Shown: piece by piece, positions 1,486 through 62,123 of the stretch
How positions within the stretch are numbered: position 1 is the first letter of the stretch
Layout of the letters: each line of letters starts with the position of its first letter
Origin: Ophelia neglecta
Taxonomy: Eukaryota
Reading direction: 5' to 3'
Assembly (NCBI GenBank): GCA_965285935.1
Contig: OZ260664.1
Span: forward strand, 41,726,001-41,790,000
Length of the DNA: 64,000 nucleotides
The notes under the pieces: model-generated
Told to the model about the DNA's origin: nothing
Database searches by the model: none
Seen by the model: only the letters and a program-made list of their open reading frames with translations
Position numbers and translations under genes: made by a program

Positions 1486-4400
1486 ACAAATTAACAATTT
1501 CTTCCTGATGCCCCCGTCACCCTAAAGGTTCGGCTTACCTGTTCTGGATTGATATTTCCAAAGACAAGACAGGACTACTTTATTAATGTCCCGTTTAACC
1601 TGGAGCAGAGTTCATAACCCTGGGTCGGTAATTTGGACTCCTATGTGTCTTGGGTTGAAATCAGGGAGAAAAGCGCATACTGTAATAACAAAGGCCACTA
1701 GTCTTAAAATATACATCTCTTATGCTGAATATTTCTTTTTAGAAAGAGGCAGTTTACTATTGGAAAATAACACAATCATCCCTTTCGTTACACAGACGTC
1801 AAATTGTTCTTTTTTTATCATACAGATTTGAACATAAAAGGCTGTTTTTCGTTTTAGATCATATATATACAAATAAGAACAACCCAAGCGGCTTTCGATG
1901 TTTTCATTTAGGTATAAACGGTGTACAGACAGCGCATTGTCCGAACCTGTTATTGAACGAAAATAAATTGTCTATGTACTCTTTTTTGTGTAAAAGAATC
2001 CTTAAGATATAATTTACTCGTGTTCACTTCCGTTATTAATTTTCCATGAAATCGTTTACATAAGAGCATATAGGGTCAAATCTGAGACAAAAGTGAACGC
2101 ATTCTTCAAGCATTTTTAACCGAACCGTTTGCCGAAACGGTCCCAACGGAGTGTGATATACCAGAAGAAATATATTTTCAGGTAGGAATATGCCGATTAT
2201 TGATTCGCAATGCTTTCCTCTTCCCGCTACCCACAGTTAACAGCATCCAGATTGTGAAGAAAAGTGAGTGGGGTGGATACGATACCTAGTGGACAATCCA
2301 CAACCATTAATGCGTAAATATCTTTAAATCTTGCCAAAATCATCATGAACCATCCGCTGTAGGCCTTCAAATAATATCAACTCCCAGTTCCATAATTTCG
2401 AGCAAGATTGAAGAGAAATGAAAACAAAGTACCTCGTGCTATGGTCAGAAGGGGGTCAGAACCATATCCTCGGTATCCGCGCTTCTCTGAGACACCTATA
2501 AATCAAATGGAGCGCAGTGCTAGGTAAACAATACTTACTCTCGAGATTTATAAAAGGAACCTAATAATCATAGGCTCTCCTAGTGGATGATTATGTTAAC
2601 CACTGCTTTTTACTTGGACTCAATTTTTTTGATAGGCTCGACAGACAGTCAACATTCACTATTGACAGGACTCTCAAACAGTCAACGGTGGTCATCTGGC
2701 AGCCGAAAGGTGCCTTCCGTCACATACTTGGACACCTAAATTTATAGACCTACTATTATTTTTATTTCTTTTAACAACTGCTAACTGTATTTAACTCTTA
2801 ACATTATTTATTTATTATTTGAATTTCTTTATCCGGCAGTCCAATTAGTTTACAACTGTTATCCTCATTGGGAGCACAGCCGACAATGTACACGTGAGAG
2901 GAATTTAATAAATATGTATTTAGAGTATTTGCAATATTGACAGTATATACAATATGTTCTTACCACGGGTAACTTAAAAATTCACCATTTACTTAAAGCA
3001 TTTGGCTTTTACAACTGATTATAGGAATGTCCACACATTTGATGTTTATTATAGAAGTGACTATGTATCTATCATTTACCGCGGCGAGTGAATCCAATTT
3101 ATAAACGTCCGCTACGTTCCACGATATCACTTATGAAATATATTCATTGCTGAATGTGACAACATGCATCGCGGTTGTATCGGGTAGAGGTAGTAGCTTC
3201 TCTATCTGAGGATGTTTGCGGGAACAGACCCTGAGATCCCTTCAAATAATGTTTTCTACTATTACTGGAAAGGGAAGTAGAACTATTTCGTAAAGGATCT
3301 ATTTAGCTGTAGGCCTACGGTAACACAAGTTTAAGTTATCACAGCCTTAATAATATCCGTAGCGTTGAACAATTAAGTAGCATCACCCTATTACAAATGA
3401 GACATTCTATGGAATAAATTTCTTTTGTGCCTAGTTATTGAATAATGAATGAGGAAAATGGACTGACATTTAATGGAGTCCAGGATATCCGATAGGCCGC
3501 CTGCATACCTCCCGTCCCCTCCCCCCCCCCCCCCCGTCCTCAATGGGGTTATATTAATGAAGCATTATATTGCAGGTGATTTTATGCCAGACTGACATTC
3601 TGTCTAATTGAATCGAGTCACAAATCAACTGGCTAGTCAGTGTCAAAGATCATGACTCCTACCTCTTTTCTTGTGTGCTCTGGGTGATGGATGAGATCAT
3701 TTACTACGGAGTTTTGCGATGGGATGCAGGTGTTTATGTTGCTGGTAATACTGCATGTCTTGAGAAAACAGTCAAAATATTGGACATCCTACGAAAAAAA
3801 AAAACATTGTTTACTGCCTGCATGAATTACGGTGGTGTATTTAACTGTTGGTTTTTCTGTCATAAAAACATTCAACAATTAATGCAACGGCTGAAAAACC
3901 GTCAGAGGTGAACTATTGAAATAACTAACATAGTTACACAAATATGCTTTTAACTAGAATAAATTAGCGACTTGAATTTTGGCGAAAATTGCCGCAGGAT
4001 ATTTTGGCGCCAAATATGTTTGGCAGTAAAGGGAAGTCGAACCGAAGCTATGCAATATATTTTAATTTGGCGCCGGAAAAGTCGGGGCCCAATTCCCCTT
4101 CTCCTATCTCGTCCCTTTATTCTACAAGCCAACATTTTCTGGGACACTGTATGATATTCATGTCCAAAGCGCAATAGGATCACGTCCTTTCTGCAGCGAA
4201 AGGACGTGCCATGGTATGTATATACCCTGCCGACAAATTGGAAATATCTATCGACCGGTCCATTATTGCTTATCTCCATCTATCTGGTAAGGTAAGGTCC
4301 GATGTGGTGTCAAGATGTCACTAGAACTGACACATCTTGTAATTAAATCATTACACGCTGCCTGCCTTCATTGTATCGGGGGGTCACAATCACGGAGTCC

Positions 4401-6589: not shown

Positions 6590-6825
6590 TCATCACATTT
6601 CTTTGCCCATCAGAAGGGTCTAATTTTAGCTTTCGTACAAAAAGGGTACATTTTTCGAAAAAACTATATCAAAATGGTGTCGTTTTTGAAAAATATCTAT
6701 CAATTATGTACATTTTTCGAAAATTTCTATCAAATGGATACCGTTTTTAAGGAATTTCTCCATAGTAATAATCCCCATTTTCAAAGCTGCGTGGAGCATC
6801 CCCGCTCTAAAATAAGGCAAGTATG
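6590..6825. repeat. Degenerate approximately 33-bp tandem repeat, probably internal to a non-autonomous element
   Basis: TACATTTTTCGAAAA..CTATCAAA recurs 3-4 times between 6648 and 6760. Confidence 0.45.
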
Positions 6826-9800: not shown

Positions 9801-12800
9801 AAGGCCATATTGGGTCAATAGAAAGTTTAGAATTAAATGAACTTTTGTCACGACAAGCCGCTCGGAGGGTAACCCTAGAATACTGTGGCCGATAGGGTTG
9901 TCACCCTCCCCTTGTCCGCCGGTGTATTAAACACCACGTATATGAAGAAGAGTTAACAACTTGGATGAACTATCCGCCCGAAACAATTCATCACACATTG
10001 ACATTGTCAGTGTAAATCAAAATTAAGTGAATTTCCCACGGGAATAGCAATAGCCTTGGGCAAGAGTACGACTTCATCAATTACTGGCGTATCATTAGAT
10101 GAGGCACGCTCGTTCTAAGTAAGATCCCGAACATCCGAGACGCATCGCCATAGAACACGTGTTGATTTTACATGGAAGTTCTTAAGGCCCAGTCTGAGTT
10201 AGGTGAGAATAGTGTCAATTTCTCATTGACATTCCAAATTAGTTGTATAAACGCCCATATTAATTGGCTGTATCTGTTACATCAATTTCTGTCCAGATAT
10301 TGTCAGTCGATGCCAAGAGCATGCGGGCCTTGTGACGGACATGGCTTACTGACACAATAACGACAAACAGATCTAGGCCCTACCTAGACCTATAGGCCGT
10401 ACTGCTGTAAACACCTGCTGATTATCATATGTCACCGAAAGAGCTACCCGGAGTGTTGGACAGCTATAAAGTGATACGAAATTGATCATTATCTAATAGC
10501 TCATAGAGACAATAGTTTTCGGAGCTGCATTCAGCTAAGCTATGGCATTTTATTGCACTAATGTATTTGTATTGTGATACTTTCAGAATTTAAACCTGCG
10601 CTTTATAACGTGATCAAGTTGTGGGAACGAACGATTTCTATCAGCAAAAAGGTCAATATCATTAAGTGCCAGTCGACTGTCTTCTGGGTTAGATAGCTTA
10701 ATATTATAGTAAATTACATGTTGGACAAGTAAACGCATGAAGAATCTTGGACGGCCATTTTTTGGTGACTTTTCATTTTAAAGATATTAATTAGATCCGA
10801 GTAAACAACACACGTAAGATTGTAACCATCAGTCTCTAGCATATGTCCTTATGTCTGATCAATCCTCTATTTGTGACATGACCAATACGGTCAGCTCCAA
10901 TGACAAGCCACAAATATGTCTTCCGTATTATAAAGACTGATCCGGCTAAATAAGGCGTAATGTAATTGGTCATTGTTGGTAAATGTTGGGTACTTAAGTT
11001 AATTCAGAAATGAATTGATAGGCCTAATAAATAAATGAACAACCTTTCATTATGCGTTATTTTAATCATGCCAATCAGACATAGGCCTACTTATGGTGTA
11101 TATGTGTATAACTACAGTATTCATCTATTATTTCCAACCTTGATATTGGCTGCAGAGAATAGAAATCAGGTAGCTAACGTTACTACTAGAGCTTTTGTCT
11201 ATTCGAAAAATACATGCATGTGCGAAGAAGGTTACTTAAGGCGGCAAGTTAGGCCGCCGAATGTAAGGTGAGACGAGGTCTCAGCAGCTGACGAACTGTT
11301 TGAGTCAATTTACTGATCTGTATGATACGGGGAAAAAGTGAAAAAGCCGACATGCGCCTAGCACATGCCTTGGTCCCAATCAATATCAAAGACAATGTTA
11401 CTGTATAAAATCCGGGCTCAATCGATGGCTCGGTGTTTGAGTTGGCTGCCGACACTGCCGACAGTGTTGACTCAGACAATCACAACTGCTGGCGAGACTG
11501 TTTCTTCTCAGGGTGGGTAACCTGATCGAAACCTGTTGATTCGAAATCAATCCACCTCGCTCTCTGATCTTCCTATCGATTCATTACCGATCGATCGTCT
11601 CGGATCAATCACTCAAAGATGAGTAGACGACGCATATTCAAATGGGGACTGTCCGTTACCTTAATCAATCAGCTCAGTAAATATTATTTTTGTATCAAAA
11701 CATGTTTTTGAGTCTAGGTGTCATGGACGTTTTAATCACAGTTTGCGCATGGAGTGATGCTGCCTATTGTACCGCGTGCACAGAGATCTGGCGGATAGAA
11801 CCGCACAGCAACCAGTCCTTAAATGAGAAATTTACTGTCTAACTTGGGTAATTAATCTAAACTGACGAATGATATGCCAATATATATAAAGATAAAAAAG
11901 CTTGCGAAAAAAAACACCCCAATTAACAATTAAATCCTTATAAAAATCAGTTTAATATGTTACCCTCGTATTTTTTGAGTCGTTTATAGCATGCACTACC
12001 TTTTATATGTCTGAACCGCCTTATGTTTGTTTTTGCTTGATAACATATAAAAAAATGTTCTCGTGTCACTTGTAAACTAAGACAAGGCCAGTCGTACCAG
12101 TCTACCCCATCAATTTACTGGTTGCCGTCTGGTACACGCCAACTTATTGAAACAATAACCTGCTTGGTGAAGAGGGTGGTAGACCTCGAGTGCTACATAT
12201 ATTTGAATAACATAATGATTGAATTTTTGATTAGATTCATATAACGAAAGAATATGAATAAAATTAACAAAGGTTGACATGTGGTAGAGGGGGCTTTTCA
12301 GAAACAAAAGAACTGAACATGGTTAGTGTATCGGTTGGATTCAACAGGTGTCCAGAGAACAAGAGCAGATAATATAACAGGGCAGGTGGAAGAGGGGAAA
12401 TTGTATGCCTCGTGTTGGGCACCTTGCTTCATGATTTATTTAACTATCTAATGTAGTCACGTAATAAAAACATGATACAGTATAAGGAGGTGCCAATATG
12501 ACAAGTATGAGTCACAAATGAACTCCCATATCAATCAGCTCAAAAACACAAAGCGGCAACCAGTAGCAATTACTGAATCATGTGACAGGAAAGGGCCATG
12601 AAATTTTGACGGGTTGTAGTTCCTTCACCGATCATCGTGGTGGTCCTAAAACAGCTTTTATGGGTCCTAAAAGGTACAACGCGGGGCTTTATGAACAAAA
12701 GCTTAATAGTGCATGGTTTTAATACAGATTTTAATTATCACAGCAGGTGTACCAAGAACATTAGAAGATTATATGTTTATTATAAATAGGCCTAGGCCTA

Positions 12801-14425
12801 TTCACTCACGCTGAAACGTTTCACTGGTTCACCATGATTTTATCATTCATGGTCTCCTGATAATATATTTGCATTAACATAATTATATCTGGGAGACTTC
12901 AGAATCATATTTTTAATACCTTGACTATAGTCCCAGAGTTTAATACCATGAAATTCTAAATAAGATCCCTCGCCATCAAGGTTTTCCATACATAGCATAC
13001 TACATGTGTTGACATATACAGGTGAACCCTGCTTCTGATTTCACATGGATGAGATGCTATGGGGCCTATAAGAAAAGCACATACACCATTTATATAAAAA
13101 GAAATACAAGGAATGTGATTATTCATCGCTTACTCAGTCTGGTATATTTAACCATTTATCACAATCAAACAAATATGAGATGTCGGAGGTCTAAAAGAAA
13201 GGTAAACAGATTTTTTTGGCGTAATGAGCTGTCTACATTTTATCCATCAGGGCACCAGAAGACTGTACCGAAATAATAAATAATTTTGAATCGGACAATT
13301 CTTGATACACTTCTTCGCTATTTAATCCAAAACAGTGTTTCTAAATTAAAATTTGATATTCGTATTTATTCCCTGTTTTATAACAGCCGAGTTAATTAGC
13401 ATTAATTTGATTATACAATTGTAACGACAAATTGATTTTTTATTTTACAAATGAACATTAGACATTTACTTCCCTTTTGTTATATGCATTGAAAGTTGGA
13501 AACAAATCATTAACTGACCGATTCCATCGCGGCACTCGGGTGATGATATATTGCATCCTTCGCCGACTAAGTGAACGAAGCATGTCATTAACGTAAAGCA
13601 AAAAAAAACTGGTCACAATATTTGGCCTTGTTGGACTCCAAACGATAAATTAATTTATAGAAAATTACCATTTAAAAAAAGCCTTTGCAATTATCTATGT
13701 TCAAATTCTGTACAATTATAATTGGGCCCGGAAGTTTTATCTGAATAATGACATTAATGCAACTATATTGTAAACTTGGCACGAGAATGGTCTTTACAGA
13801 TAAAGACTAAACATTCAGCGAATTAATTAAGATCATACAGTTAAAGCTAAAAAACGCTTCCAGCCTTTGAGCAGCAAACTTCCCTTTCTTGGGTAGCCTA
13901 GACATTCAAATTTTAAATTGGTCGGATCAGCATATTTTTTGCTTAGCACGCAATTAACCTGTGACATCAATATGATAGGCAAGCCATTTCCCTGCCAAGC
14001 ATCACACTGAATATAAGGGGCCAGCAGCTATATGGATGAACCAACTTTAGCTCTTTATTCAAAGTTAAAGACATTAATATCACCAAGCATATGTGTATTT
14101 TGAGAGGGAGCGTCATGTGATGGTCAGAGCAAGATAAACTTCTGGTTAACAGCTTATGCAGATATATGCAGATCGAAGCATGTGTTCTTACATGTCTACA
14201 AAAATCTTCTTTAAATATAAGTGCAGATTTGGTGATCCGTAAGAATTTGTTGAACATCAAGATTTAACAGATACGATAATATAATTTTAGTCCCAAATAG
14301 GCCTATATGGCACCTTAGATAAGGCATTTTTCGTTCTCTCCTTCATTTCCCATTGAATCTGGTGTCATAGAACAAGTACAGCGCGATATGTAAGAACCAG
14401 AGTGCAGCCTTGGCCTGGCCTTAAA

Positions 14426-14627: not shown

Positions 14628-17600
14628 TTGAAGTTGTCTGTACAATTACTAAATCCACATAGACTTCCGAATCGTTCGTTTGATTCTGGACCAAGGCCTA
14701 TGAGTTTATCTAAACGTCAAAGTCACTTACTATATTACTGACTCCGGACAGCCTGGCAATCTATGCATTTCCTTGTACACCTACTATTAGTTTACCCTCC
14801 CTAGGTTAATGATAGACCATATTCCATTTAGCTGGACATTATCTGGAGATCAACTGTCCGCTTCATGCAGTCGGGAGACTGAGGGCTATCAGAGGCGCTC
14901 GAGTTTCTTTGATGTGATTATACTTCTCTATTTGTCTTCACACCTTTACCCCGGTTGAGGTGTTCCTCAACACGCCCCGTTCACTCATCTCAACGTTTGG
15001 ATGTATGCAATGTTTAGATGAGCATGCTCTTGCATGATCATATCCTAACGAAGAGGAAAACCCAATTGAAGAGATCAGGTTTTTAACTCCTCTTAGCGAA
15101 GAATTTCCTCGTGTTATGTAGTTTTAAAATGTGTTCATAAGTGAATAAAATTGAGAAGCCCTAGCTGTGCCTTTATATTAAATACCTGTTCTTTGAAACG
15201 TTCAATGAATTTAGGCCTATACACGAAGTCATATATTTCAAGTGAAGAGAGGTCCGACATGGCTGTAAATAGGCTTTACCTGTCTTGTTTGACCTTGCTG
15301 ACTGTGAATCTTCTGTTTTTAAACTGTATAGACTTATTTAAAGACATAGTATTTATGAAAAGGTAGCTTTCAAAAAGTACTCATGTCATTCGCAGCAGAA
15401 GATGTTTCATATTTAGTGTCGGCGGGGCTTTATATATATGTGTTTGACACGGGTCTCAAAAGGCCATTTAAAAGCCTTGAGACCACCATTTGGTGTCTCG
15501 ACGTGAACTGATGAATGAAGGTGTAACTAGCAACTTGACGTCACTTTCATCTTGCACGACTTCTAAAAAATGCCGAGCAGCGTGAAGTTTGTGTCTTGTT
15601 AGTTAGGCTCCTAAAAAACTGTGTCTGTTGAATGCACCCTTGTAAAACACAGTCAGCGATGGTGAACGGATTCATTTCATTTTCCCACTGCAGGAGAAGT
15701 CATATTTTATCCCTGAAGAGGCTGGGAGAAAGTTCTGATGCTTTTGTTCCACTGCTGGGTCAGGTTATTTAATTGCCGCAAAACCACTAACCCCTGGCCT
15801 TCTCCACTTAATGAAGTTCTGCCGTTATCCCGTCCCATGTATACGTGTCTGACAGCCTACGTCTCCGGCGCCCTGTGCTTTGCTGTCAACTGACAGAGTG
15901 CCTCATCGCTTTCCAATTGCTGCAAAGTCTGCCTTTTTTGAACGGCAAATTAGCGCATAGGTGACAGCCGGTATATTCGTTTGGTCAAAGGACCAAAGCA
16001 ATTGGCCATTAACATGATGCATCGAGTTGTACCTCAATAGCGTAATATTTTAATATCCTTTAATTATGTGTCAAAGGTCAAGTGGGATTTCTTTAGAGAA
16101 ACCAGCCGCACTGTCGGTATACAGAGACTAACAGAGTTGCGACTGCAGGCTTCTAATAATACAACCCAGTCTTCGCTCTTTTAATATGGCACACCATACC
16201 TTTCAAACTGTTACATTTACGGGGACTCGATGTTATGTTTCTTTCTCCGGACTGACTTGTAAACAGGCCCAGATACTATAATGGCGAGTGCGTTTAATAT
16301 TGCAGCGCCTAGACTAATATGCCCGCAAAACTTATACATTCTCGTAGGGCGAAATGTAATGAAAGTTAGAATATTTGAAAATTGACAGACATAGAAGCAC
16401 ATGGGAAAAACCGTACATTAGATGATTCATAAAGCCACCAGTTTGTATTGTTTATTTAGCCTTTATTAATCCCAAGTCCATTTTATAGACTTACATGCTA
16501 AGTGCAAGCCATTAATACAGAACGACTGACAGTACCTGTGCTGCACGTGCTAGCTGTGTGGACCAATATATCCCGAAATGCTTAGGGCATTCATTAATAT
16601 CCGGTGTCCACAAGACCAAAGCAAGCCGGTAACTTGCAAAATAATTTAAGTGGGTTTGAACCTGGTATTTATCTAAAACTCTTTTGAAGGTATTATTGGA
16701 GGGAAATGTCGTTCGTGTTTCTCACAATACTTATAGCTGTCTCCTGTAAACAGGTGCCTTAAAACATGTGCACTCATTACATTTAAGTTTAATACGCATT
16801 TCCTTTTAGCAGACAATATGGAAACTAAGGGATGGAAAAGTGTTTTTACCATTAAAGCCCAGGACATGCCATCCTGCGTCCGCAGAAGCATGCAGGTTAG
16901 ATTTCTAGAGCAAAGAAGATCACAAAGACCGACATTTCATAATCATATTTATTGGAGGTAATATGAAGTCCATAGAAGCCCACTACTAACTAGAGGTTAC
17001 TGAGTGAAATATCAATAATACCATAAACATATGAAATTGGGTTTTCTATTACCTACCCTAGCCATTGTCATCACATTACCATACTTCAGGCGATCGACAA
17101 AGTGGCTTATTTATATGATCACGCTATTCTTGCATCAATATTCAATTGAAAAAGGCGATCACTTTGTTCATAAGAAAGTATAATATTAAAGGTTAGAAAG
17201 CATGCGAGAAGACGCCGCGGTTTACGAGGCATTAATGTTCACACCAGAGCTGTTTGCTCAACTCTTTATCAAATCACAATACGATATCTTTGGCAACAGG
17301 TTATTCATAGTGGTGGATGGTTTAGATATTGTGTGTTTTGCGCGAAGGTGCTCCATTGAAAACAGTTTTTCTCTGAATCATTGTGAGAAACGCTGACTAA
17401 GTACACTTACAACTTGACCGCAACCATGCAATGAATTTTAAAACTACGAATTTCACGGGAAACCTCCAAGGGGCAGGCGGCATTAGATGCCCTCTAGGCC
17501 TGTTGGAAAATTTGAATTCTCACTTAAATACCGTTTTATAGACGCTAAAGCATCACTTAGCCCTAATTGTAATGCCAACATTGCGGTATTATTTCATGGC

Positions 17601-20600
17601 AATTTGACGGTAGATAGGACATGAGAACTCGGGGCTGCCCATTGTGTGCCTTCCCTAGCTTCATCTGTCATTTCTCGAGCTGTTTGACCTCTTCTGCTCT
17701 GTTCCCCTAACATAAAAACATGGAAAATTAAACATTTTGTGTCGCTTCATTGTCTGGAACAATAGCAACTTATACTAATTAGACCTGTTTTCTTAAATTA
17801 ACCACATGTAAATGCCACTAACCAACAAAGCCAGCACTTGGCCTTAGCTGGGATAAAAGAACCCCTGCCTATCAACAGCCCAGCAGGTCTCCGGTTGTGG
17901 CAAAGGTGTTCCCACCAGATCGACAGAGAAGCTCTTAGCAATGACGAGCGATAAATACCAACAGGGTTCAACAAGGCAATGGCAGCCTGATTAGGATGTG
18001 CAGCTATCAAATCCTGAGAGGTGAAATATCCCACACGCTTTTCTTGTATTGAGAGGCCAATTAGCTGGGTTTGGATTGGCCATTGTATGGCCCACGGGGA
18101 AGGTGGGTGGGTTGGTTGAGGGGGGGAGGACACCCCTCACTGTCCTAGACGTCTACCGTACCACTCGACCGGTAAATAAGACGAACATTACTGGGTAATT
18201 ATCTCAATTGCCAGAGGCACGATCCCCGACGAACGCAATTTGTACTGGCACATTTAAAATTCTAAGCGGTTTGGATTGCTCCGATGGGCCCTTTTGTGGC
18301 GGCACGTGAAGCGAAGGAAACTTGGCTATAATTTGATGGTGTGCTTCGGCCTAAGTACCCATCTTTCCCACACTAAATATTAGCCGAAATGTGCATCAAA
18401 GCTATGAGACGCGAGTCTAAAAGGGGACAACTTCGATAAGGTTTTTGTACTTACCATTGGTTCTCTGAACTGTGAACTGCTCTGGAACGATTTTTTTTAT
18501 AATTAGAACAAAAACAAATATGAATAGACTAAGTCTCCCAGAGCCCAAACACCCCGAGCACGACAGGTGTGAACTTTTTTTAAATGTAGAAGTGTATTCT
18601 GTACTGATCACCGCTTTATGAGCTAAATATGCCAACACCTTTTATATTGTGCTGAAATTAAAGCCTCGTGTTCTGGTGAACAATGAACGTGTGACACGAG
18701 GCAGGTTTTTTCCATGGTATATATTAGGCTATTATTTGCATTTCAGTTATTAATCTCCCGATGTTGCAGTTGGAGTTGATACAAGCGTGGGGTGGTACAA
18801 AGGAAGCGGTGGGTGGATTTAGGAAACGGAATGCTTTCCTGTGAGAAACCCGCCGTACAAAGCGATTAGGCATGCTGGGTTTCTGCCCGCGTGTCTTCGA
18901 CGCTATTCTTTTTTCATGTTTTAACTATTTGACACAATCGGACACGCTTGCTATTTTCTAGTTACAAACTGCTTAGCTTTAGAAAACCCGAGCTTGGCAC
19001 CAGGAAGCACGAAGAGGCCACATCAGGGTTTGTACTTGTCACTGTTTACTCTCACAATGTTATATTTCACGTTACACTGTAGCAATATTTAAACCTTTGG
19101 TCCGAAGTATAATATTTGGATTTCTTTAATCAAATACAAGTTGTGGCACGGCTACTATGACCTCTATACCTTTCTGAGCCACATATAACTGTGACCGCTC
19201 AGAGACACGGGTAACTAAAATGACCCTCTTGAGTGAGGATCAAATTGGCCTTCTGGAGACAGGAATTTTTATGTGGGCCTATTGATGTATTTAAATAAAG
19301 ATAATAATAAGTCAATCTTTGCAAAGCAAACCAAATCAAAATCAAGCAAAATTGGACGTGATAGTCTAAATCTATGCTCGTAAGTCAGTAAATGTTCTAC
19401 CATTTTGCTGGAATTGTTCCTTATTTCAAAACAAGAAAAAACCCTATGTTTGAGTGAACTAATTAGGCCTATTTTATTTAAAAAATAATAATTAAAGACG
19501 AAATATATATATCATCAAAACAATAAACACTCAAGATAAAAAGAGGTAAGTTGACAGCGATACAGAAATCTCAGTATCCAATTGACAAAGCAGACGCCAG
19601 GTTATGATCATAAATTTCTGACTATCTAAAAGTAAAGCTCATGGAAGGGAGCTTTTTATCTTGTTAGATGTAGACATATTCCCGGGCCGCAGGTCGGGTG
19701 AGGCGGAACATCCTGTGCGGGGAACGAGTATACAAAGGTCTATAGAGTGTACAGAGACTAAAAAATTATCATAGTTCTGGCACATTTGACTTGTTTGGTC
19801 TGCTCTCGGCACATCTTAAAATGAGACACACACTTATATCGTGGCCTTTTTGAACGATTATCAGACAAACTTGTTACGTAAGGGATAGTCCAATTCAGTT
19901 GCCCCAGGGATGTGAACTATTTCCCAAGGCTGCAGTTCGATGGCACTAGATTACCGCCGCCCCCCCCCCCCAACCTCCCCCTCCCCCTTCCCCTACCCCC
20001 CCCCCCCTCCTTATCTGGCTATATTTCTTGCCCTATATAGCAGCCTTTCCTCATTTGATAGACACGATAGTTTCATCCAAAAACGAAACAGTAGAGTCAG
20101 CACATAAAACGATTGCCCTTCTGCTCAGCCTCCATCTTTCCTCGGGGAGGGGGGGGGGGACCTAACAAATACGTAAATCCCGGCCCTGGATAACCCATCC
20201 AAATCAGAGTATGCCGAATGAGCACCCACCCATGTTAGAATTTGGCAAATTGAACCCATCCATTGAGGATCTGCCGAAAAAGGACACAATGCATGCAAAT
20301 CCCAGAGCTGACAACCCACAGCGGCATGTCCCCGTATACCAGTATAATGGAGCTGACTCCCCCGAGCATCTCACCCTTTTCTTTCTGGCTGCTTCAACCA
20401 AATAAAGTCTGCAGATCGTAAGGTTAGGTCGGTTGGTCTTCGATAAAACAGAGTGATTGTAGCTTGCCTAATGCAATCAGGCAATATGAAAGTTAGTAAA
20501 TATTATAGACTGGTAAATCTATGATTGATTTTCAAGGGGCAGGAGGGGCAAGTCCTCTCCCATGAAGGGGTTTGTAGCTTTGTCCCCGATCACTCTCAGG

Positions 20601-20643
20601 GTGGACATACATGTACCTATTAGACTTGTGGTGAGGAAGGAAA

Positions 20644-20682
20644 AGGGAGGGGGGGGGGGGGTGGGGGGGGGGGGTGGGCGGG
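20644..20682 (+). other. G-run tract (potential G-quadruplex)
   Basis: Near-continuous G runs interrupted by single A, T or C bases; a complementary-type C tract lies at about 19958-20010. Confidence 0.55.
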
Positions 20683-26633: not shown

Positions 26634-26635
<2 letters not shown>

Positions 26636-45500: not shown

Positions 45501-47054
45501 AATTGTTCTCCAGAAATTTGTGTGTATAGCTTCAGTTGGTTAAATAAATTGCTCTCTACTCTCAAAGAATCTTACCAAACATTTAAAATTTTGGTTTGTA
45601 ATTTATTTCGCAGTAGAGTTAATTTATTTTTACTGTAGTTGACTATACGAATTGATATCGTCTAATATTATAGGCAAATAGGTACGCCATTAAACTTTAG
45701 TCAAATTTGAAATTGTTTACTCTTGTACATGGAGAATAAATAAAACGGGTTACCGTGTTATATAATGATGTGGACAATATTAACAACGCTTTCTAGTCTT
45801 TTGGGAACTTAATTTATCAACAAGACGTAACCGCGGTAATTAACTGTCAGAATCTGGCGGGCGCTAGTGTGAAACCGTCCAAGTTCGCACAACCCCTGGG
45901 CGACCTAACAAGGATTTCCCTCTTATCTGTGCCAAATGTGTTTCTTTTACATCATTTGTTAATGTATTTAAGGGTAATTAATAAAACAAAAGTACTAGGC
46001 CCTCTATCTTATGAACAAAAACGATCACTAGAAAATTGTGATGTACAAATTCGCGATAAACGACTGAAGTTAGCCACTCATTTTGGGTGTAACTTCGGGT
46101 AAGTTCGAGCACCCGTCCTTGTCAGTTCCGCTTTTCGTCCTTGTACGTTCGCGCACCATTAAAACTTCATTTTAAAACAACTACTAGGCTTAGGAAACTA
46201 AATAATAACTGAACTGAGCTAGCAATTAATTAATATCACTTCTTTAATTAAGCTATAATTAACGTAAAAATAGTCTTAGTTAGTTCGCGCGATCACCATG
46301 TTAGTTCACGCAACAGAACAGTGTCAGTTCACACACAATCAAAACAACTATATTTGAATCAAAGTCGTGTTTTGGGTGTGAGTTACTTTATAAATCACTT
46401 TTCACACGTGTTTAAGACGACAGATAATTCGTGGCGTTTGGGATCGACGAGGCGGAGAATCCAAGTGTACATCGTTATAAAGTTAACGACAAAAGTAACA
46501 GGTATCACGTCATATTCATTTTCTTATTAATTACAAATGTGGACTGCATGTTTGATTTTTATCAAGAATTGACCTCAGACTTCTCCTTAAACACAAATTA
46601 ACATGTAAGCAATGTTGTACCCATTTCTAATGCCCGAACACGATAAAATGATTAACTAACCAATAATTCGAAATCACATAGACCTACCTAGCGGGAACTA
46701 ACTCTTACTAGTATGTGAACTCATACGGATCAACCTTAGGCCTATGGGCCTCTAAGGAAAGTTATGTTTGAGGAACTCATCCACCAGTGCCGACGTCATG
46801 GCCCTTCCAACGACGACACGCAGCAAAAACGAGGCTCGATCTAGGGATTGAAGAGAACTTGGCCTCACTGGAATATAAGACATCTTTGCGGTTTAAATCA
46901 TGTCGTCATTTTTTGATGGGCCTAGGCACACAGCATATTGTCGTACCGTTCATAGAGGGACATGTGGTTTAAATTCTTGCTGCCACGCTATTGTTTGGGG
47001 TTTCGTAAGTCCAATTGAACACAAACCGAACATCGCCTACAACTGCTTTGCTCA

Positions 47055-50283: not shown

Positions 50284-53072
50284 CATAACGACAAGTTTTA
50301 AGATGGATGGCATAAAACTTGCATTTATCAATTAATAAGCTATAATTAGGTTCTTAGTGAGATGCACACTGTCAATTTGGCATAATGTTAAAACCATGCT
50401 GCTGTAGTGCCATGTTCACATGACTTAGCCGTGGGTAGGGACATTGTGATTTCAATAACTGGACTCGGTTGAGGTTGAACAAATAAAGAGGGTGGAGATC
50501 GCCATGATTGTATACATGGTCTAGTACAGGTTCACATATTTGGTTTAGGACAGATTACATCGCCTTTCAAACATAGCGCCCCAGACGTTATATTGGCTAT
50601 TCGTTGCTCTTGTCCACCGATGAAACAGTGTCTGGCTTTATCTGTTTTTTTGGACCGCTCACAATTTTGTCGGGGCCAATCAGGAATTCGCCTCCGAAGA
50701 GTAAGCAGGTAATGTTCATATTTTCTTTTCATATAGAAATCGCTAGCTGGCTTTAGACTTTTAAACTTGCATGTTATGATATTTTTCAAATTATTTGCCG
50801 TTTACAATGGAAATGGGTTGTAGGTCGAGACATGATTATGACATCCACAAGTACGCATGCATTATCCGAGAGGTCTCCTAGTGACCGATTTTGAGGTTTT
50901 TAAATCATGAGACATGCTGTTTAAAAATAAGAAGGATCAAGTATAGCTCGAGATATTATCCAGCCTCTCTGTTGACTTATCTTCATGTGCTTGCACATCC
51001 ATTGAAGTCACAGAGAAGCGAGGTAGGTCCTCGGAGAAGCCCGCTTCCCTAGCTCATGTATTAGTATAATGAATTCATTTGAAGCCGGTAGCCCACATAA
51101 AGAACTCAGTTTGCTCATGAGTTGTGAAGATGGCGATACACACTTCAGTTGTGAGGAATGCGAAAAACAAAGCCCAAATTGCAAATCTTATAAGCCCAAA
51201 TTTACTACTACAGCAGCCGATTTAACTCATAGCGGCTCATGAACATTTAAAGACGCTGCGGGGTAAAGATTATTTATATAGTCCAAATTATTACGAAGTG
51301 AATTATCAAAATCTTTTTGAGAACCCTCATTTCTTTATATCACCCCAAAGGGCAAGTCATATGTCATAGAACCCCCTAAAGGCTAGGCCTACTGCTCAAT
51401 TGAAAACCGGTCAATATTTGATTTGTATGTTTACGCGGGGAATATCCATATTATATTGTACATGCAAACTTTGTTAGTAATTTAAAAAATGAACCTTTTT
51501 TGCACTACACGTTGTCAGGTACAAGGTGCAGGTATCAGATAGTTTGAGAGTAACAATTACAGCCGAGCCTAGCTCTCTGTTAGTATTCAGCTGATAAGTG
51601 AGGCAATTGGGATTAAAGTCGCTTAACTTTTATACTACTACGAAACCTGTACAGCCAATCACCTATTTTAGACCGATTAGACTTGTTTTGAAATGCTAAT
51701 TTTTTCAAAAGCTTGATTTCAATGTCGTTTTGGCCGAATACGACGCTAGCATTTGCTTAAGGATTATACACCCGATTGCCCCCCTCCCCACCCCAACCTT
51801 CCCCGAGGCGGCCGTTTTTCGCTCATTTTCTGAATATTGCACATCCGTGAAAAGAATTTGACTATTTGACTGACTCGTGCAGAACTATGGGCCCGTTATA
51901 TGGCTATTTACCTATTACCTGCTAGATAACAGCGCAAAAGTTTGGCAGGTTTGATCTTCAGTCCTGAAGGGACTAAAGAAATGATGTATGTTTAATTCAT
52001 ATGCAAACACTTAGGGAGACCGTTATTACACGTGTAGTTATTTAGAACAATATGCCATCTACCTTTATACTTGTTAGGCCCACGACTCTTCAGCGCATGA
52101 ATCTCCTGAGATAAAAAAAAATGGCCTAGACTCAACCAGGAAAACGGAACTATTGGCTTTTTTTACCGAGAAGCTCCGCAGGCGACCCTGGAGGAAAACG
52201 TTAACTGGAGCCGTGACCTGCAATAAGTTAAACAACTTTAATTGCCAAATATGAAGAAAAAGAAGTGAAGCAAGAGCTACTTGCTGGAGGCATCCCGCCT
52301 TTAATTTTCGCTTCTTCCTAGCTAAAACATTATTTATTCCTAAATGTTAAAAAATATATAATTTGCTTATGGGAAATATTCCAAACAATTCGTTCATCGG
52401 AGGGAATCCAAAAAACTTAAACTTGGAAATTACTTTTGCTTACCGACGCCCTCTGAACAAATAAGTTGGATTAAAGAAGAAGCTGTTTCAGGAATTGTCC
52501 TCGAAGGGGGTGGGTCGGTCTGGATAACAGGCAACCTTTTTCAGACACCTCCCCCCCCCCCCCACACACACACAGACTACTGGAAAAACTTTCCTAAGAA
52601 TCATCTCGCCTAGGACACAAAAAAACCGAGAACCCACGCCTCCCGGAAAAGCTTTGTGCAAGGAACCCCTCCCCCCCCCCTCCCAGCCTGGACAACACTC
52701 CATCCCCTAGACAACCCCAAACAACTGGTTCTAAATTTTCGGATGCAAATTACCCCACTCCCATCCCAGGATAATTTTTAGGCAAAACCAGCTACCCCCC
52801 CCCCCCCCCGCGGATATTCTTAACCCTTTACCTCTCGCCGGTAGATGTTGTCCTTGTCAAAATAGGGGTTTATAGCTACATTCAAGGCTTGGGTATAATT
52901 ACCGGCGAACAGATTTGTGCAGTGAAAGTGGAGGATTGTGTTGAATTTTTGAAAATATCGGGCTTTAAACTGAGAGATGCCTGTCGGACCCCATGCAGGA
53001 GTCCGTTCCCTTTTTATTTTTATATAGTATATAGTGACTCTATATGGGGGATTTTCAGTTTTAAAAGGCCCT

Positions 53073-53223: not shown

Positions 53224-56200
53224 CAACATGGATTGAGCAACCGCATATTGGCGGGCCCAAAAATGGTGCTTGCGTTTAAAGAAAAAGTGTGTATACGTTA
53301 GGCCTATATTAAAATACTCTTCTATGATGGATGTATATCAAGTGAAGATATAAACAACCACTCGCGATTCCTCATGATAATATATAACCATAATTATTTA
53401 TTTTGCTCTTTCATAAAGGGTAATTCGCTCTAATTAAGGCCCCTTTTAATCTTCTTGCCTCTCGTAGTTGTATTATTTCTGGAATAAACGCTTATTAAAA
53501 AAAGAAATCTCACGCAATTCCTTGCTCTTTACAGTTATAATCTATATCCTAATACAAATGATTCCCAAGGGTTTGAAGAGAGGGAAGTCTAAGTATTAAA
53601 TCCGACTCGTTCCGGACCGAAGTCAGGTCCCGTGGTACCTATGTCCGGCCACGTCTTGTCTTAATCCGACCCTTTTCTTAAAGTTCCACTTATCGGGACT
53701 TAATGGTATATGTACGAATGAACGAGGTAACCCTAACACGTGGGGCGTTTATTTCTCCTACTTGAACTGCTTGTTTAATATATATCATGGGTCCTATCAG
53801 CAAATATAAACTCGAAAAATAAAATCTATTTGCTCACAAAGTGATGCCAAACCATTGTACACTATTCCTCGTGTCCACTTAATTGACAGTGACTTCTTGT
53901 ATTGTGGTTCTGGAGGTTTTTCCGTTTTACCTGTTTAATAACTAAATTTGGTCTAAATAAAGATGGGGGGGGGGGGGGGAGTAATGGCTTATAACTATTG
54001 CGCCTTGACAAGCCAAGCATTGGTTAACACAATAGTTCATGGAACTTTTGCTTTGTAAATTATTCACGGACATTGGCCTATGGACCAACTCCAAAAAACG
54101 CCTCATCATTGTCATGTAACTTTGTAGAGGCCAGACGTCGGCTATTGGACGTATATAAGCCTATATTGTATAAGCCTCATTATATTTAATTTGTGTATTT
54201 TTCACAAATATATTATTTCGTTTTTTCTTAATAAAAAAAAATTATTCCATTCAAGTGCACCTGTCAAATTGCAAATTCACCAAACGGGCCTTTTAAAATT
54301 TAATTTTTGGCGCAAACTTCTCAGTTAAGATCTCAATCTTCTCGAACTGTATCTTGCTCAAGCGGCGGAGCAAATTATTGGCTGCGTTCTACATACTTTT
54401 TCTCCAGCTCCAATGAGGTATTCCCTGGCCAGTATCTTCATTACAAATTTGGAGAGAAGTTGTCGATGTTTTTTTCTTTGGTTTTTTTTCAAACAACTAA
54501 ATCTAATAACGACGGCAAAGAACCAAAAAACTGATTAAACGTTAACAGAAAAAGGGGCGGGTTATAATTAACATCTGATTATGCTGACTTTTTGTAAATG
54601 TGTTAAATTGTACATCGTGGTGGGGAAAAATAGCGAAAGCATTTTATTGCAACATGGCAATATAGTCTTATCTTGAAATAATTGTTATTATATTTGCAAT
54701 AGGGCGATCCTGCCAAGACATTGATAGCGCCATGACAAGCCTCAGAACTAGTTGTAATGCTAACACCCAGGAAACCGAGGTTCGAGTGGAAACATTTGCA
54801 CTTCTTTCCGTTTTCGCGATATAACCTATATTGACGCTATACCGAAAAAATAGTTACTAATACGGTGTTTCATTTTCCTGCCTACGTTCATCACCCTTAA
54901 ACGTGAAACGCGATTCTCAAACGACTGAACTAGAGCCATTTGAATTGGTTAATTGTGTATAAATAAAAATAAACAAATTTGACACATATTTCAGCTATAA
55001 ACCTAAGTAGTTCATATGGCATTTCTGATTGTGTAATAGGTTTTATCTCATATCCAGGGCAATAACAATAAAAAGGTAAGGTTTTGTTATAAAATTAATA
55101 CCATTAAATATGCTATCAAACAAACAAAATATTTTTTAAGTAATTTAATTCTATAGATAAAAATCCATGTGTCACTCTGAACATTGTTAAAAGCTTATGC
55201 AGACGTTTCACATTAAAGACAAGAATGTCTGTCCGATCCATTGTCTATTTTATATGTTGACTGCATCGGATTTCATGAAAACTTTGCCTTTATCAAGAAA
55301 CATGCATATTAATTATAATTTTACAAGTAATAGCTTTATAAATCTTCTTAACATATTTGTCTGTGTTCATGATATTGTTCACCGTACACGCCATTGATTT
55401 CGAGTCCTGATCTTGGTCACTGCGCTCTTTTCAGTTAAACATTCTCATAACTGGAAGAACAACGAGCGATCCAAAGGTCAAAATAATCCAAGGACGAAGA
55501 AAGCAATTTAGGCGTCAGGCCTATTGTTAACCAATAGTCTGCGTTCATTGGTAAAGCGTCAAATCTTGTCCCGAGTAGTTTTACCCTAGTGTTTTGAGTT
55601 TGGGCATCTTTTCATCCAGGGTACTTAATTGTCTTATCGTAATCGGCGAACAGCCAGTTAGTCTGCATGGACTGCTTGTGTCAGGTAATGGTTTTATAAG
55701 GATAAAACAGTTCCATTTTATCATCTAATCAGTCGCATGGTCCTTAAGTATGCAAATATATAGGGGTCAGGGGTCAGTTCAAGGGTGTCACAGAAATTGA
55801 ACGTGGTCAGCAGTATCTGCAAAGGGTATTATGCACTTTCCGAATTGGTTGAACTAAGCAAAAAATGTTCTTAGCTACATTTCCAACCACACTACTGCCA
55901 CCCTGCTGCTAGGCATAAATTTTGGCTTCGAATGTTTTTAAATTCTACACGATTGGACACTTTATAACGGCCGTAAATAGGAATACATATGGCATATTCT
56001 GCTCTGGAAGTCACACACGCTTACTACTTAAATCCAAGTAAAGGGATTAAATCTCACCCTCGTACTACTTGATGGAGAAGCATATTGGCTATGTATAAAC
56101 TAACCACTTGCCAAATTCTGCAAACACTTTATATTGCATATAAATATTAGGGTTTTTTTTCACGCGTTTCTAAATAAGGCCCAGCTTGCAACATCATACG

Positions 56201-59767: not shown

Positions 59768-62123
59768 CTGGAAACAAAAGACAAAATCTACATACACCTA
59801 ACCTTTTACGCCGATTTCCTCTCTGTTGGAATATTTGACAATGATCTCTCGAATGTATTTCGAAAACAAAATTGAGATAAATACAATATTTAAACCTTTT
59901 ATCTTTGGTAAGTTGACGGACACTCGTCAGTAGTAAACACTGTGAGTAGTTTTGTCCTAATACGTCTTATAGTCAGAAAATAGAGCTAAAAGTGGGAAAG
60001 TCAGGTAACCGTGTACCGAGGGAGCGTTTGGGACGGGTGTGGTTGTGTATATAAAAAAAATATGACAAGTTCATAGTAGTATTTTTGCTAAACAAGATAA
60101 TGGACATTTCTACTAATACAATTGCCCAACAAACTTCATTTTGCCTGAGGCTGCATGTGGCTAGATATTTCATAACAGGCCCCCTGTCTATATGTCCAAA
60201 TAGCAGCTATTTCCGAATCTAAGAAGGAGACGCATTGTTATGAAAACCCAGGTTATGCATTATTATGTGCACTTATGTATCAAAAGGGCGATATGCATGC
60301 AGTTATAGAAGTATACAACAATTGGGAAAAATCTATTAAGCATACTTAAATCAGACAAATGCTTTCAGAATCATTAATCCGTTAGTCACTCACAAATGGT
60401 TTAAAACGGTCTATCTACATTATTGATGCTAACGTTAGTGATTTGATAATAAGATTGCAGTTGCCTTTAACCCTGTGAAGGATTGTCGTGGCATGCATTA
60501 AAATTAGGAAACGCATTGCTCTAATACATAATTGAGTTAGATAATTATATGCACCGTTTTGTTTCTATGTTTTTACGTTTTCAAACACGGGTGAAATGTA
60601 TGTATGGTTTGGATTGAAGACAAGGGAATAATAACCTTAAAGCAAAACTGTTTGATTCTAGAAGTCAGTATTATGCCTATAACGTCCTGAGGGACGCGTT
60701 ACTATGTAATGCCCTTGTAATGAGATTAAAAAGACGACATACAATCAACTTCATATCCTGCCTTCATATCCAAAGTTATTTATAAATAACTCCAAAGTCA
60801 TTTGCCAGTAAAATATCCGGCGTACCAAAACAATGTAAAACGCCGTTAGCACGTCAATGTGGTTGTGCATGGGTGTGGAGGGGTATTGTCAGGGAAGGAA
60901 ATATACAGAAATGCGGTTTTTTATTATCAAAATGTATTCATTTCGGTCAATAACACTTACGGTGCAAACTTAAATATAATTCGCTACTATATAATAATCA
61001 ATTAATAATATATAAGAATAAGTATTGTTTAACTCCTACACCCACTTATTCAAACGTTAATTCATAATGTATATCAAGTCGCTAAGTTACCATTTATATA
61101 AATATAATGAAGAAAATCACAGAGTTAAAGTTATTCATATGCGATATTATTGACACAATTGAATAAAGGACGGAGTGTCAATAGGAGCTGACCCTACATA
61201 CGAATATGGTTAACAAACTGATATTGTATTTAATATGAAGCCTTGTGTGCGGAATTTTATTGTGCAGATATTCCCTATGCCTGACTAGTCTCACGAAACA
61301 AGAAAAAAGAAGCAGCCCCCCCCCACCCCCCCACCCCCAAAAAAAAGAACCCCAAACGAACCAATCATTCTGAGGTATGGATTTATTGGACTCGCTAACG
61401 GTGTCGATAGGAAACCATGGCATTTTGGACAATTCTGTTAGTTTGGTCAAGATCACAGAAGCGAAAGCTTGAGCTAAATGTTTGTTGGTCAATTTATTTA
61501 ACCGAATTGTTACAATAAGCATAGAGCAGAACGAAAAGACAAACAAAAATATCGATAAGTAGTTGGCCATACCACATATAGAGTTTACATGTGAAAAGGC
61601 TCCCCCGTAATTATGGCCATTCAATTGCTGCTTAATGACCTCTAGTAAATCAAATGAGACGCCGGTCGGCCTCGGCCAATCCAGATCGGCCTACAAGCGA
61701 GTCGAGGTCGAAGTCGGGCAATTCAAGCTGCAAGAGTTCCTTATCCAAACAGTCAGGGCAATGTTATGGTATTCACCAGGACTATAAAATGTTTCGGCAT
61801 CATGAAGTTGGTCGTGTAAAGCACAGACGATGCTTTCCTGGGACCATGACAATCAGTAAATGTAGGTGCGCCTACAAAAATAACCCCTAGGCCTATAGCT
61901 GTATACCCAGTAGCTAAGTCGTTATCCAGAATATTCCATTAAAACTGGTCCGGAATCTGCAGGAACCCTCAACTGCATGCCAACAAACACCAATTCCCAG
62001 ATCCCTAAGTTTGTAACGAATTATTTCAAATCTTTGTTTTGTTATCACTAGCATTTAGAGGTATTCGGCGTTTTTTCATGATAAGATTTAGAGCCCAGAA
62101 CGAACGAGTAAGTGGTGAACACA

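What the first reader, a model, noticed from the sequence alone, without database searches (positions are those of the whole stretch)
3310..61895. About 25-fold excess of the palindrome TAGGCCTA across non-coding DNA
Seen: 21 exact copies counted by hand, starting at 3310, 11019, 11082, 12787, 12793, 14298, 15212, 19464, 21249, 21870, 22340, 24193, 28956, 28962, 35505, 37682, 39028, 46737, 51384, 53299 and 61888, against about 0.8 expected at 39% GC. Two sites are self-overlapping tandems (TAGGCCTAGGCCTA), there are many one-mismatch variants, none fall in coding exons, and the flanks show no shared homology. Inference: the TA-GGCC-TA form and tandem growth fit repeated excision footprints of a TA-targeting DNA transposon or a motif-generating repair process, possibly concentrated in open chromatin. 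A dispersed protein-binding site is the alternative.
Basis: partly seen in the sequence, partly recalled or inferred. Interest (0 to 1): 0.75.

Follow-up and report, generated by a model that had tools for sequence, protein, structure and literature searches.

The report
Six-base scars added at TA sites
This animal genome is peppered with the 8-base palindrome TAGGCCTA because six bases were repeatedly added at plain TA sites, most likely as scars left when a jumping gene hopped out, but that jumping gene has not been found.

Summary
All 21 exact TAGGCCTA copies lie at the listed coordinates, against 0.86 expected, and it is the top non-simple 8-mer in the window.

The word arises by gain of six bases at an existing TA:
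- Site 14298 is a heterozygous 6-base presence/absence in the sampled animal.
- A site in a repeat has TAGGCC where 7 of 7 aligned paralogs have only TA.

The addition is very uniform. It re-hits its own TA in geometric proportion: 69,501 single, 642 double, 9 triple. It also mixes with the classic Tc1-type scar TACATGTA at the same sites (685 against 5 in the control).

Active Tc1-like elements with TA|CAGT...ACTG|TA ends exist and explain TACATGTA. No TA|GG...CC|TA element turned up in about 342 kb examined, so the donor is inferred, not shown.

In a 264-kb sample the word follows CpG-retaining DNA, about 12-fold by density per TA.

The scan had already flagged this word on at least 8 other windows of this genome. 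One follow-up (s1-733637) reached the same reading.

Best reading: excision scars of an unidentified TA-targeting transposon (about 0.55).

The parts
3310..3317 (.). TAGGCCTA scar, unique flanks
11019..11026 (.). TAGGCCTA scar; same in contigs of runs X1-X3
11082..11089 (.). TAGGCCTA scar; same in contigs of runs X1-X3
12787..12800 (.). double scar TAGGCCTAGGCCTA (second hit at a TA of the first scar)
14298..14305 (.). TAGGCCTA scar that is polymorphic: one contig in X1 and one in X3 lack exactly 6 bases here, leaving TA
   Evidence: table 4: 14298 left out 6; X1 13.7 of 61.7, X3 10.6 of 41.3
15212..15219 (.). TAGGCCTA scar
19464..19471 (.). TAGGCCTA scar
21249..21256 (.). TAGGCCTA scar
21870..21877 (.). 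TAGGCCTA scar
22340..22347 (.). TAGGCCTA scar in G+C-rich low-complexity DNA; lies in a 134-aa open frame without Pfam match
24193..24200 (.). TAGGCCTA scar
28956..28969 (.). double scar TAGGCCTAGGCCTA
35505..35512 (.). TAGGCCTA scar
37682..37689 (.). TAGGCCTA scar
39028..39035 (.). TAGGCCTA scar
46737..46744 (.). TAGGCCTA scar
51384..51391 (.). TAGGCCTA scar
53299..53306 (.). TAGGCCTA scar
61888..61895 (.). TAGGCCTA scar
20608..20615 (.). TACATGTA, the sister scar type (Tc1-like CA...TG ends)
63988..63995 (.). TACATGTA, sister scar type

Best explanation
Each TAGGCCTA marks a place where six bases (GGCC plus a second TA) were added at a pre-existing TA. The most likely cause is insertion and later excision of a cut-and-paste transposon that works like Tc1/mariner elements.

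The proposed sequence of events is:
1. Integration duplicates the TA target.
2. On excision the transposase cuts the non-transferred strand two bases inside the element, so each flank keeps TA plus two terminal bases (GG on the left, CC on the right).
3. End joining seals TA-GG to CC-TA.
4. The scar offers two new TA targets, so later hits give TAGGCCTAGGCCTA, or mixed runs with the CATG scar of the resident Tc1-like elements.

Shown here: the 6-base gain at TA, its polymorphism, its uniformity, the geometric series of re-hits, the mixing with TACATGTA, the TA-rich flank preference, and the presence of active TA|CAGT...ACTG|TA elements that account for the sister scar.

Inferred only: that a GG...CC-ended element exists or existed. 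It was not found.

The bias towards CpG-retaining (probably germline-unmethylated) DNA would reflect where that element lands or from where it can excise. My confidence that the word is a 6-base insertion product at TA is about 0.9. My confidence that the insertion is a transposon excision scar is about 0.55.
For: Polymorphism: at 14298 exactly 6 bases are absent in one contig each of X1 and X3, while the reference form is also present.

Polarity: the copy at L018:5506 has ...TTTAG-TAGGCC-TAAGAG..., whereas 7 of 7 aligned paralogs have ...TTTAG-TAAGAG.... Of 39 other copies spanning the site, 38 are exactly 6 bp shorter and one is 4 bp shorter. One search gives a second site with a 6-bp gain relative to its paralog.

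Uniformity: for TAGG-N(k)-CCTA in 264 kb, k=0 occurs 43 times and every other k from 1 to 40 occurs 0-6 times (about 3 expected).

Re-hits: 69,501 single, 642 double and 9 triple. A pure-birth model predicts 5.9 triples.

Mixing with the Tc1-type scar: TACATGTAGGCCTA occurs 350+335 times against 5 for the control. One search shows a run TACATG-TAGGCC-TACATG-TACATG-TA inside a Tc1-like element.

Resident Tc1-like elements: they have TA|CAGT...ACTG|TA ends, and two copies are 99.3% identical.

Flank preference: TA follows the word in 20 of 86 flanks against 9.3 expected (p=7e-4). TACATGTA shows the same bias (12 of 52 against 5.6).

Known chemistry: passages of PMC6943129 state that Tc1/mariner excision leaves 3' overhangs, and footprints made of the first or last 2-4 nt of the element flanked by TA.
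Against: No donor was found.
- TA|GG...CC|TA inverted-repeat pairs are at background level in 264 kb (5 pairs, against 4-8 for control end dinucleotides TACC and TAGC).
- There are none in a further 78 kb.
- Both Tc1-like families whose ends I could read have CAGT-type ends (one read at both ends, one at its right end only), not GG.
- No mariner-type transposase was seen.
- From memory, I know of no Tc1/mariner family with GG termini.

The scar is more uniform than end-joining footprints usually are.

Two of 5 informative sites arose otherwise: a 3-bp indel and a C>T change, both in short tandem repeats.

In the second 6-bp case the gap fits a TA duplication only if one neighbouring substitution is also assumed.
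Confidence: 0.55

Rival explanations
1. A transposon-independent, templated or enzyme-specific repair process adds GGCC and duplicates TA at staggered breaks in TA. One possibility is a TA-cutting nuclease or domesticated transposase, followed by fill-in and a fixed short addition. In that case no mobile donor ever sat at the site.
For: No GG...CC donor was found. The product is unusually uniform. The domain bias could reflect where such an enzyme acts.
Against: No known process adds a constant GGCC. The exact parallel with TACATGTA argues for the same kind of event: the CA/TG bases of that scar match resident element ends, and it mixes with GGCC units at the same TA sites. Untemplated G/C tailing would give variable TA-Gn-Cm-TA forms, but only n=m=2 is in excess.
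Confidence: 0.2
2. The scars are left by host-driven removal of TA-bounded, germline-limited elements, loosely as in ciliates. The donors are therefore missing from an assembly made from somatic tissue.
For: Donors are absent from all DNA examined although at least one scar is young enough to be polymorphic.
Against: The polymorphic site behaves as an ordinary heritable allele pair in the contigs. As I recall, and as the search listing for PMC6143343 indicates, ciliate excision is precise and leaves one TA, not TA-GGCC-TA. Resident Tc1-like and Harbinger elements are present in the assembly, so transposons are not generally eliminated. The tissue of origin is unknown to me.
Confidence: 0.05
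3. TAGGCCTA is a binding site for a dimeric DNA-binding protein, and selection in regulatory landscapes has enriched it. The insertion events are incidental, or were co-opted.
For: The word is a palindrome. It is enriched in CpG-retaining DNA around a zinc-finger developmental-type gene. Earlier scan notes report it in other gene deserts.
Against: It arises by a 6-base gain at TA, not by point changes from near-cognate words. One site is a neutral-looking heterozygous indel. Decay products, mainly transitions, accumulate as expected for unconstrained DNA. The same units pile up in tandem and inside transposons. Binding itself could not be tested.
Confidence: 0.05
4. The excess is produced by slippage of a (TAGGCC)n microsatellite, or by copying of the word inside satellites and interspersed repeats.
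For: Many genome-wide copies do sit in 26-, 36-, 40- and 41-bp satellites and inside repeated elements.
Against: All 21 window sites have unique flanks. The copy-number series 69,501:642:9 is geometric with no long arrays.
Confidence: 0.03

Closest known systems
Tc1/mariner excision footprints (for example the Sleeping Beauty canonical footprint TAC(A/T)GTA; the Tc1 footprint TACATGTA is recalled)
   Same: There is a TA on both sides and a few constant inner bases that form a palindrome, as two inverted-repeat ends would give. The empty site is a single TA. The target context is TA-rich (passages of PMC6943129).
   Different: The inner bases are GG/CC. These match no element found here and no Tc1/mariner family that I recall. 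The product is almost perfectly uniform. There are tens of thousands of copies, and the word is the top over-represented 8-mer. It is biased to CpG-retaining DNA.
TACATGTA scars of the resident Tc1-like elements in this same genome
   Same: The architecture is the same (TA + 4-bp palindrome + TA). It shows the same preference for a following TA, and it occurs in mixed tandem runs with GGCC units.
   Different: Its donors are present (TA|CAGT...ACTG|TA). In the 264-kb sample it is densest in CpG-poor DNA, the opposite of TAGGCCTA. Genome-wide its excess is weaker (117,701 against 63,683 for the reversed word).
PIF/Harbinger-superfamily (PHIS) transposons, very abundant here
   Same: They are numerous and intact in this genome (678 candidate loci). 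From memory, many PIF/Harbinger ends begin GG(G/C)C.
   Different: Their target duplications are TWA, AT, none, ANT, CWG or TNA, never TA (passages of PMC4482050). The one family whose end I read starts TAA|GCGAG. From memory, mPing-type excision is mostly precise.
TA-bounded internal eliminated sequences of Paramecium
   Same: Tens of thousands of TA-bounded excision events descend from Tc1/mariner-like elements (recalled; search listing of PMC6143343).
   Different: Those are excised precisely to one TA in a somatic nucleus. Here a 4-base remnant stays, and the alleles are heritable.

Membership tests
Tc1/mariner-type excision footprint | The remnant is flanked on both sides by the duplicated TA target, and the empty site is a single TA | tested here: met
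   Heterozygous 6-base indel at 14298. 7 of 7 aligned paralogs have TA where the scar copy has TAGGCCTA.
Tc1/mariner-type excision footprint | The inner bases equal the terminal 2-4 nt of a TA-targeting element resident in the genome | tested here: not met
   No TA|GG...CC|TA inverted-repeat element above background in 264 kb, and none in 78 kb more. Only about 0.045% of the genome was inspected. The feature is met for the sister scar TACATGTA.
Tc1/mariner-type excision footprint | Preference for TA in a TA-rich, palindromic context | tested here: met
   TA follows the scar in 20 of 86 flanks against 9.3 expected (p=7e-4). T at +1 in 41 of 86 flanks against 29 expected. The effect is modest.
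Tc1/mariner-type excision footprint | A canonical footprint accompanied by a spectrum of non-canonical end-joining products | tested here: inconclusive
   Length variants are at or near background. TAGGGCCTA and TAGGCCCTA occur 2 each in 264 kb. The uniformity is greater than usual.
Dispersed protein-binding motif | Instances arise by substitution from near-cognate words and are maintained by selection | tested here: not met
   3 of 5 informative sites are 6-base gains at TA. There is an excess of transition decay products.
Dispersed protein-binding motif | A protein binds the word | not testable with these tools
   No binding or chromatin data are available.
Microsatellite (TAGGCC)n | Slippage gives a long-tailed array-length distribution | tested here: not met
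   69,501 single, 642 double, 9 triple. A geometric series predicts 5.9 triples.
Interspersed repeat / MITE carrying the word | Copies share flanking homology | tested here: not met
   None of the 21 window sites has a non-self hit in 264 kb. Window 10-30 kb is nearly all unique genome-wide. Elsewhere in the genome part of the copies do lie in satellites and repeats.
PIF/Harbinger (PHIS) footprint | The target duplication of the group matches the duplicated bases of the scar | tested here: not met
   The PHIS groups have TWA, AT, none, ANT, CWG and TNA (PMC4482050 passages). The family read here has TAA|GCGAG.

The most novel reading that the evidence does not exclude
The scars record a very active cut-and-paste element, or a host excision system, of a kind not yet described. 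It would have GG...CC ends, an almost error-free 4-base remnant (as self-complementary GGCC overhangs would give), and a strong preference for unmethylated developmental-gene landscapes. Its copies would be missing from the assembly because they are few, germline-restricted or eliminated. If so, the roughly 10^4-10^5 scars form a fossil map of germline chromatin accessibility, alongside a complementary TACATGTA map for methylated DNA.
Probability: 0.15. Interest if true: 0.85.

Novelty: new variant of a known kind. Interest (0 to 1): 0.62.

Why it matters
If these are excision scars, a single 8-mer records tens of thousands of past transposon visits. It shows that cut-and-paste elements present at low copy number can still reshape non-coding DNA on a large scale.

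The opposite domain preferences of the GGCC and CATG scars would give a sequence-only readout of germline methylation or chromatin state around developmental genes.

The missing donor is itself a concrete, testable puzzle. It could be an undescribed transposon family, a germline-restricted element, or a new repair activity.

In practice, the word is a strong confounder for motif discovery in this genome. It will surface as a top 'regulatory' palindrome although it is a mutational product.

I found no report of it in four full-text searches.

Tried and rejected
Donor hunt:
- I scanned 264 kb (the window plus 200 kb to its left) for TA-flanked inverted repeats starting GG and ending CC. The count was at background. 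A further 78 kb of other loci held none.
- My first impression that CA...TG pairs were abundant was wrong. One search showed they come from a self-complementary CATGCGCACGCATG word in a 3.5-kb tandem array. I do not use that count.
- Recurrent words after TAGG were all satellites or the tandem array.
- Transposase searches: DDE_3 gave 84 matches. Five top loci showed no TA-flanked inverted repeats. Two families whose ends I could define have CAGT ends. Mariner PF01359 gave nothing. DDE_Tnp_4 gave 678 candidates, but the PHIS target duplications do not fit.
- pogo, piggyBac, hAT and other superfamilies were not searched.
- A BLAST of the Tc1-like terminal repeat found no related miniature elements in the held DNA.
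- Poly-G runs are not preceded by TA more often than chance (4 of 57), so they are not ends of the missing element.

Other checks that led nowhere:
- No co-motif in the flanks.
- Read 'loose ends' lie at GATC and look like Hi-C ligation junctions, not insertions.

Weak result: mixed doubles number 685, against about 3,084 expected if GGCC and CATG hits were independent and evenly spread (from 642 and 3,705). This hints at partial segregation, but (TACATG)n microsatellites inflate the 3,705, so I give it little weight.

Results against a strict domain rule: five double-scar loci (3 kb each) have CpG observed/expected of 0.39-0.71. At least four of them are copies of repeats.

Papers:
- PMC4482050 and PMC6943129 were read as passages only. 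Their supplementary figures (terminal-repeat logos, footprint schemes) were not seen and may bear on which termini PHIS and Tc1/mariner groups have.
- All other papers were seen as search listings only.
- Recalled, not checked: the Tc1 footprint TACATGTA, the Tc1/Tc3 target consensus, mPing termini and precise excision, and methylation enhancing Sleeping Beauty excision.
Full report
**1. The observation**

The 100 dinucleotide-preserving shuffles give a mean of 0.86 and a maximum of 4. Markov expectations of order 0 to 3 are 0.86-1.12. Orders 5 and 6 approach the observed count only because their training 7-mers are themselves nearly all copies of the word (TAGGCCT 26, AGGCCTA 25), so that is circular.

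After masking the tandem arrays found, TAGGCCTA is the highest-ranking 8-mer apart from homopolymer runs. Among the 16 words of the form TA-XY-Y'X'-TA, no other reaches 8 copies (21 against 0.76 expected for TAGGCCTA).

The window has no N. It belongs to a 762-Mb animal genome. It holds a C2H2 zinc-finger ORF and a sulfotransferase ORF. No site lies in either ORF. The 8 open frames of 70 aa or more that overlap 7 sites have no significant Pfam match. All 21 sites have unique flanks.

**2. Genome scale**

The genome holds 69,501 copies. Scaling the window's shuffle expectation to the genome gives roughly 10,000. That is a rough figure. The tool's own control word contains a CpG and is therefore biased low (3,592).

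The genome average is 5.8 per 64 kb, so this window is about 3.6 times denser than average. The total overstates independent events. About 60 of the first 100 listed places lie in short-period arrays. Satellites of 26, 36, 40 and 41 bp carry the word or a longer palindrome. Repeated elements carry internal copies.

**3. How the word arises**

Contigs of three runs from one sample were laid on window 10000-15999, which holds six motif loci. At 14298, the first base of a motif, exactly 6 bases are missing in one contig of X1 (depth 13.7 of 61.7) and one of X3 (10.6 of 41.3). The reference form is also present. This is a heterozygous TAGGCCTA/TA polymorphism. The other five loci show no difference.

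Of 43 motif copies in a 264-kb sample (the window plus 200 kb to its left), four have paralogs that span the site:
- One (L018:5506) reads ...TTTAG-TAGGCC-TAAGAG.... The 7 aligned paralogs, six from five distant regions of another chromosome and one local, all read ...TTTAG-TAAGAG.... Of the 39 other copies that span the site genome-wide, 38 are exactly 6 bp shorter and one is 4 bp shorter. These copies are mostly units of large tandem repeats and so are not independent. They still fix the polarity: the six bases are a gain at an existing TA.
- A second site also differs from its paralog by 6 bases. Written as a TA duplication, it needs one extra neighbouring substitution.
- The remaining two lie in roughly 33-bp tandem repeats whose units already contain TAGGC or CAGGCCTA. 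They arose by a 3-bp indel and by a C>T change.

So 3 of 5 informative sites are 6-base gains or losses at TA.

**4. Properties of the process**

*Uniformity.* In 264 kb, TAGG-N(k)-CCTA occurs 43 times for k=0 and 0-6 times for every k from 1 to 40 (about 3 expected). TA-Gn-Cm-TA is in excess only for n=m=2.

*Decay.* One-mismatch variants show a modest excess, mainly transitions (window 36 against about 21; 264 kb 125 against about 83). Treating the ratio of intact to one-hit copies as neutral decay gives a mean age of roughly 8% divergence per site. This is my rough estimate. The same reads show about 87 single-base differences in 6 kb. The process is therefore old enough to have decayed copies and young enough to be polymorphic.

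*Re-hits.* Singles, doubles and triples number 69,501, 642 and 9. If each TA, including the two in a scar, is hit independently, the expected number of triples is 5.9. There are no long arrays, so slippage is not the driver.

*Target context.* TA follows the word in 20 of 86 flanks against 9.3 expected (p=7e-4).

**5. The sister scar and the resident elements**

TACATGTA has the same build. In the 264-kb sample it is 26 against 7-10 expected, with the same preference for a following TA (12 of 52 against 5.6). Genome-wide it numbers 117,701 against 63,683 for the reversed word.

Two copies of a 3.7-kb element that carries a DDE_3 match are 99.3% identical and have ends TA|CAGTTATGC...GCATAACTG|TA. 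A second family ends ...GGACTG|TA. These are Tc1-like elements whose terminal CA/TG are the inner bases of TACATGTA. That agrees with the published rule that Tc1/mariner footprints consist of the first or last 2-4 nt of the element between TA dinucleotides (passages of PMC6943129).

Inside the 3.7-kb element, both copies carry the run TACATG-TAGGCC-TACATG-TACATG-TA. Genome-wide the mixed double TACATGTAGGCCTA occurs 350+335 times against 5 for its control. Some of these lie in copies of that element. GGCC and CATG units are thus interchangeable additions at the same TA sites. This is the strongest indirect argument that TAGGCCTA is the same kind of event with a different donor.

**6. The donor was not found**

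TA|GG...CC|TA inverted-repeat pairs are at background in 264 kb and absent in 78 kb of other loci. Mariner-type transposase was not detected.

PIF/Harbinger-type transposases are very numerous and intact (678 candidates). However, the target duplications of that superfamily are TWA, AT, none, ANT, CWG or TNA (passages of PMC4482050), and the one family I read begins TAA|GCGAG.

Only about 342 kb of 762 Mb was inspected, and other superfamilies were not searched.

A low-copy donor is plausible. By my own estimate, a few thousandths of an excision per genome per generation over the inferred time span would suffice.

**7. Domain bias**

In the 264-kb sample, TAGGCCTA per 1000 TA sites rises from 0.34 where local CpG observed/expected is below 0.45 to 4.1 where it is 0.8 or more. 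TACATGTA falls from 4.13 to 0.75. G+C content is similar (Mann-Whitney p=1e-4 and 4e-3). The sites are spatially autocorrelated and this is a single region.

The window itself has CpG observed/expected of 0.7-0.96 outside its satellites. The rule is not strict. Double-scar loci elsewhere have values of 0.39-0.71, and most of them lie in repeats. Mixed doubles are common.

Earlier first-reader notes of this scan report the same domain pattern on other windows. I treat those as leads only.

**8. Verdict**

The word is a mutational product, a six-base gain at TA. It is not primarily a binding site, a microsatellite or a repeat family.

The best-supported mechanism is the excision scar of a TA-targeting cut-and-paste element with GG...CC ends (about 0.55). 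A donor-free repair or nuclease process (about 0.2) and more exotic readings are not excluded.

Tc1/mariner footprints are well known. The new aspects are the scale, the uniformity, the GG/CC remnant without a donor, and the apparent opposite chromatin preferences of two scar types. Four full-text searches found no report of this word as a genomic scar.

Noticed in passing
window 3521, 8292, 19960-20675, 52551-52810, 53965 and many places in L006-L025: Homopolymer G or C runs of 10-19 bases are very frequent: 64 occurrences of the 8-mer against about 1 expected in the window, and 57 runs of 8 or more in 264 kb. They are not preferentially preceded by TA.
   Followed up: partly
window 47703-50227; also 40876-41553 and 42000-42505: Satellites: a 20-bp unit in 127 copies (90% matches), a 19-bp unit in 35 copies and a 49-bp unit in 10 copies. 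These stretches have low CpG observed/expected and almost no scars.
   Followed up: no
L013-L016 (about 128 to 98 kb left of the window) and again about 61 to 50 kb left: A tandem array with a period of about 3.5 kb (9-16 copies) contains a self-complementary CATGCGCACGCATG word. There is no TAGGCCTA in about 30 kb of it.
   Followed up: partly
L024 (about 14.2 to 11.2 kb left of the window): A 47-bp satellite with more than 60 units.
   Followed up: no
L039:1721-5433 and L040 (reverse strand, 1746-5454 on the reverse complement): A 3.7-kb Tc1-like element with TA|CAGT...ACTG|TA ends; two copies are 99.3% identical. Its DDE_3 match covers only the C-terminal part in one open frame, suggesting a spliced transposase. 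It carries 9 TACATGTA and 2 TAGGCCTA internally, shared by both copies.
   Followed up: partly
G000 genome-wide; L037:2791 onward and L038: PIF/Harbinger-type transposase genes are extremely numerous and mostly open (678 candidate loci; 150 scored, all strong). Two copies of one family are 99.6% identical, begin TAA|GCGAGATCGG and hold two TAGGCCTA scars inside. One copy has a 1.57-kb insertion.
   Followed up: partly
L040 (reverse complement 6753-7087); G000 C1 near 0.556, 1.06 and 1.85 Mb: A 26-bp satellite in which every unit starts with TAGGCCTA occurs at several loci in both orientations, in pairs of arrays about 1.3 kb apart. It may be part of a dispersed element. I could not fetch it.
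   Followed up: no
G000 C1:1819-3262, 236065-236856, 246924-247573: A 41-bp satellite near a chromosome end carries the longer palindrome TAGGCCCC(N)GGGCCTA in each unit.
   Followed up: no
window 10612 and 13831: Contig 'loose ends' in run X3 join unrelated sequence exactly at GATC. They look like Hi-C ligation junctions, not insertions.
   Followed up: yes
264-kb sample (window plus L006-L025): TAACGTTA (10 against 2.9-4.4 expected) and TACCGGTA (6 against about 2.2) are mildly over-represented. They could be further scar types, from AC...GT and CC...GG ends.
   Followed up: no
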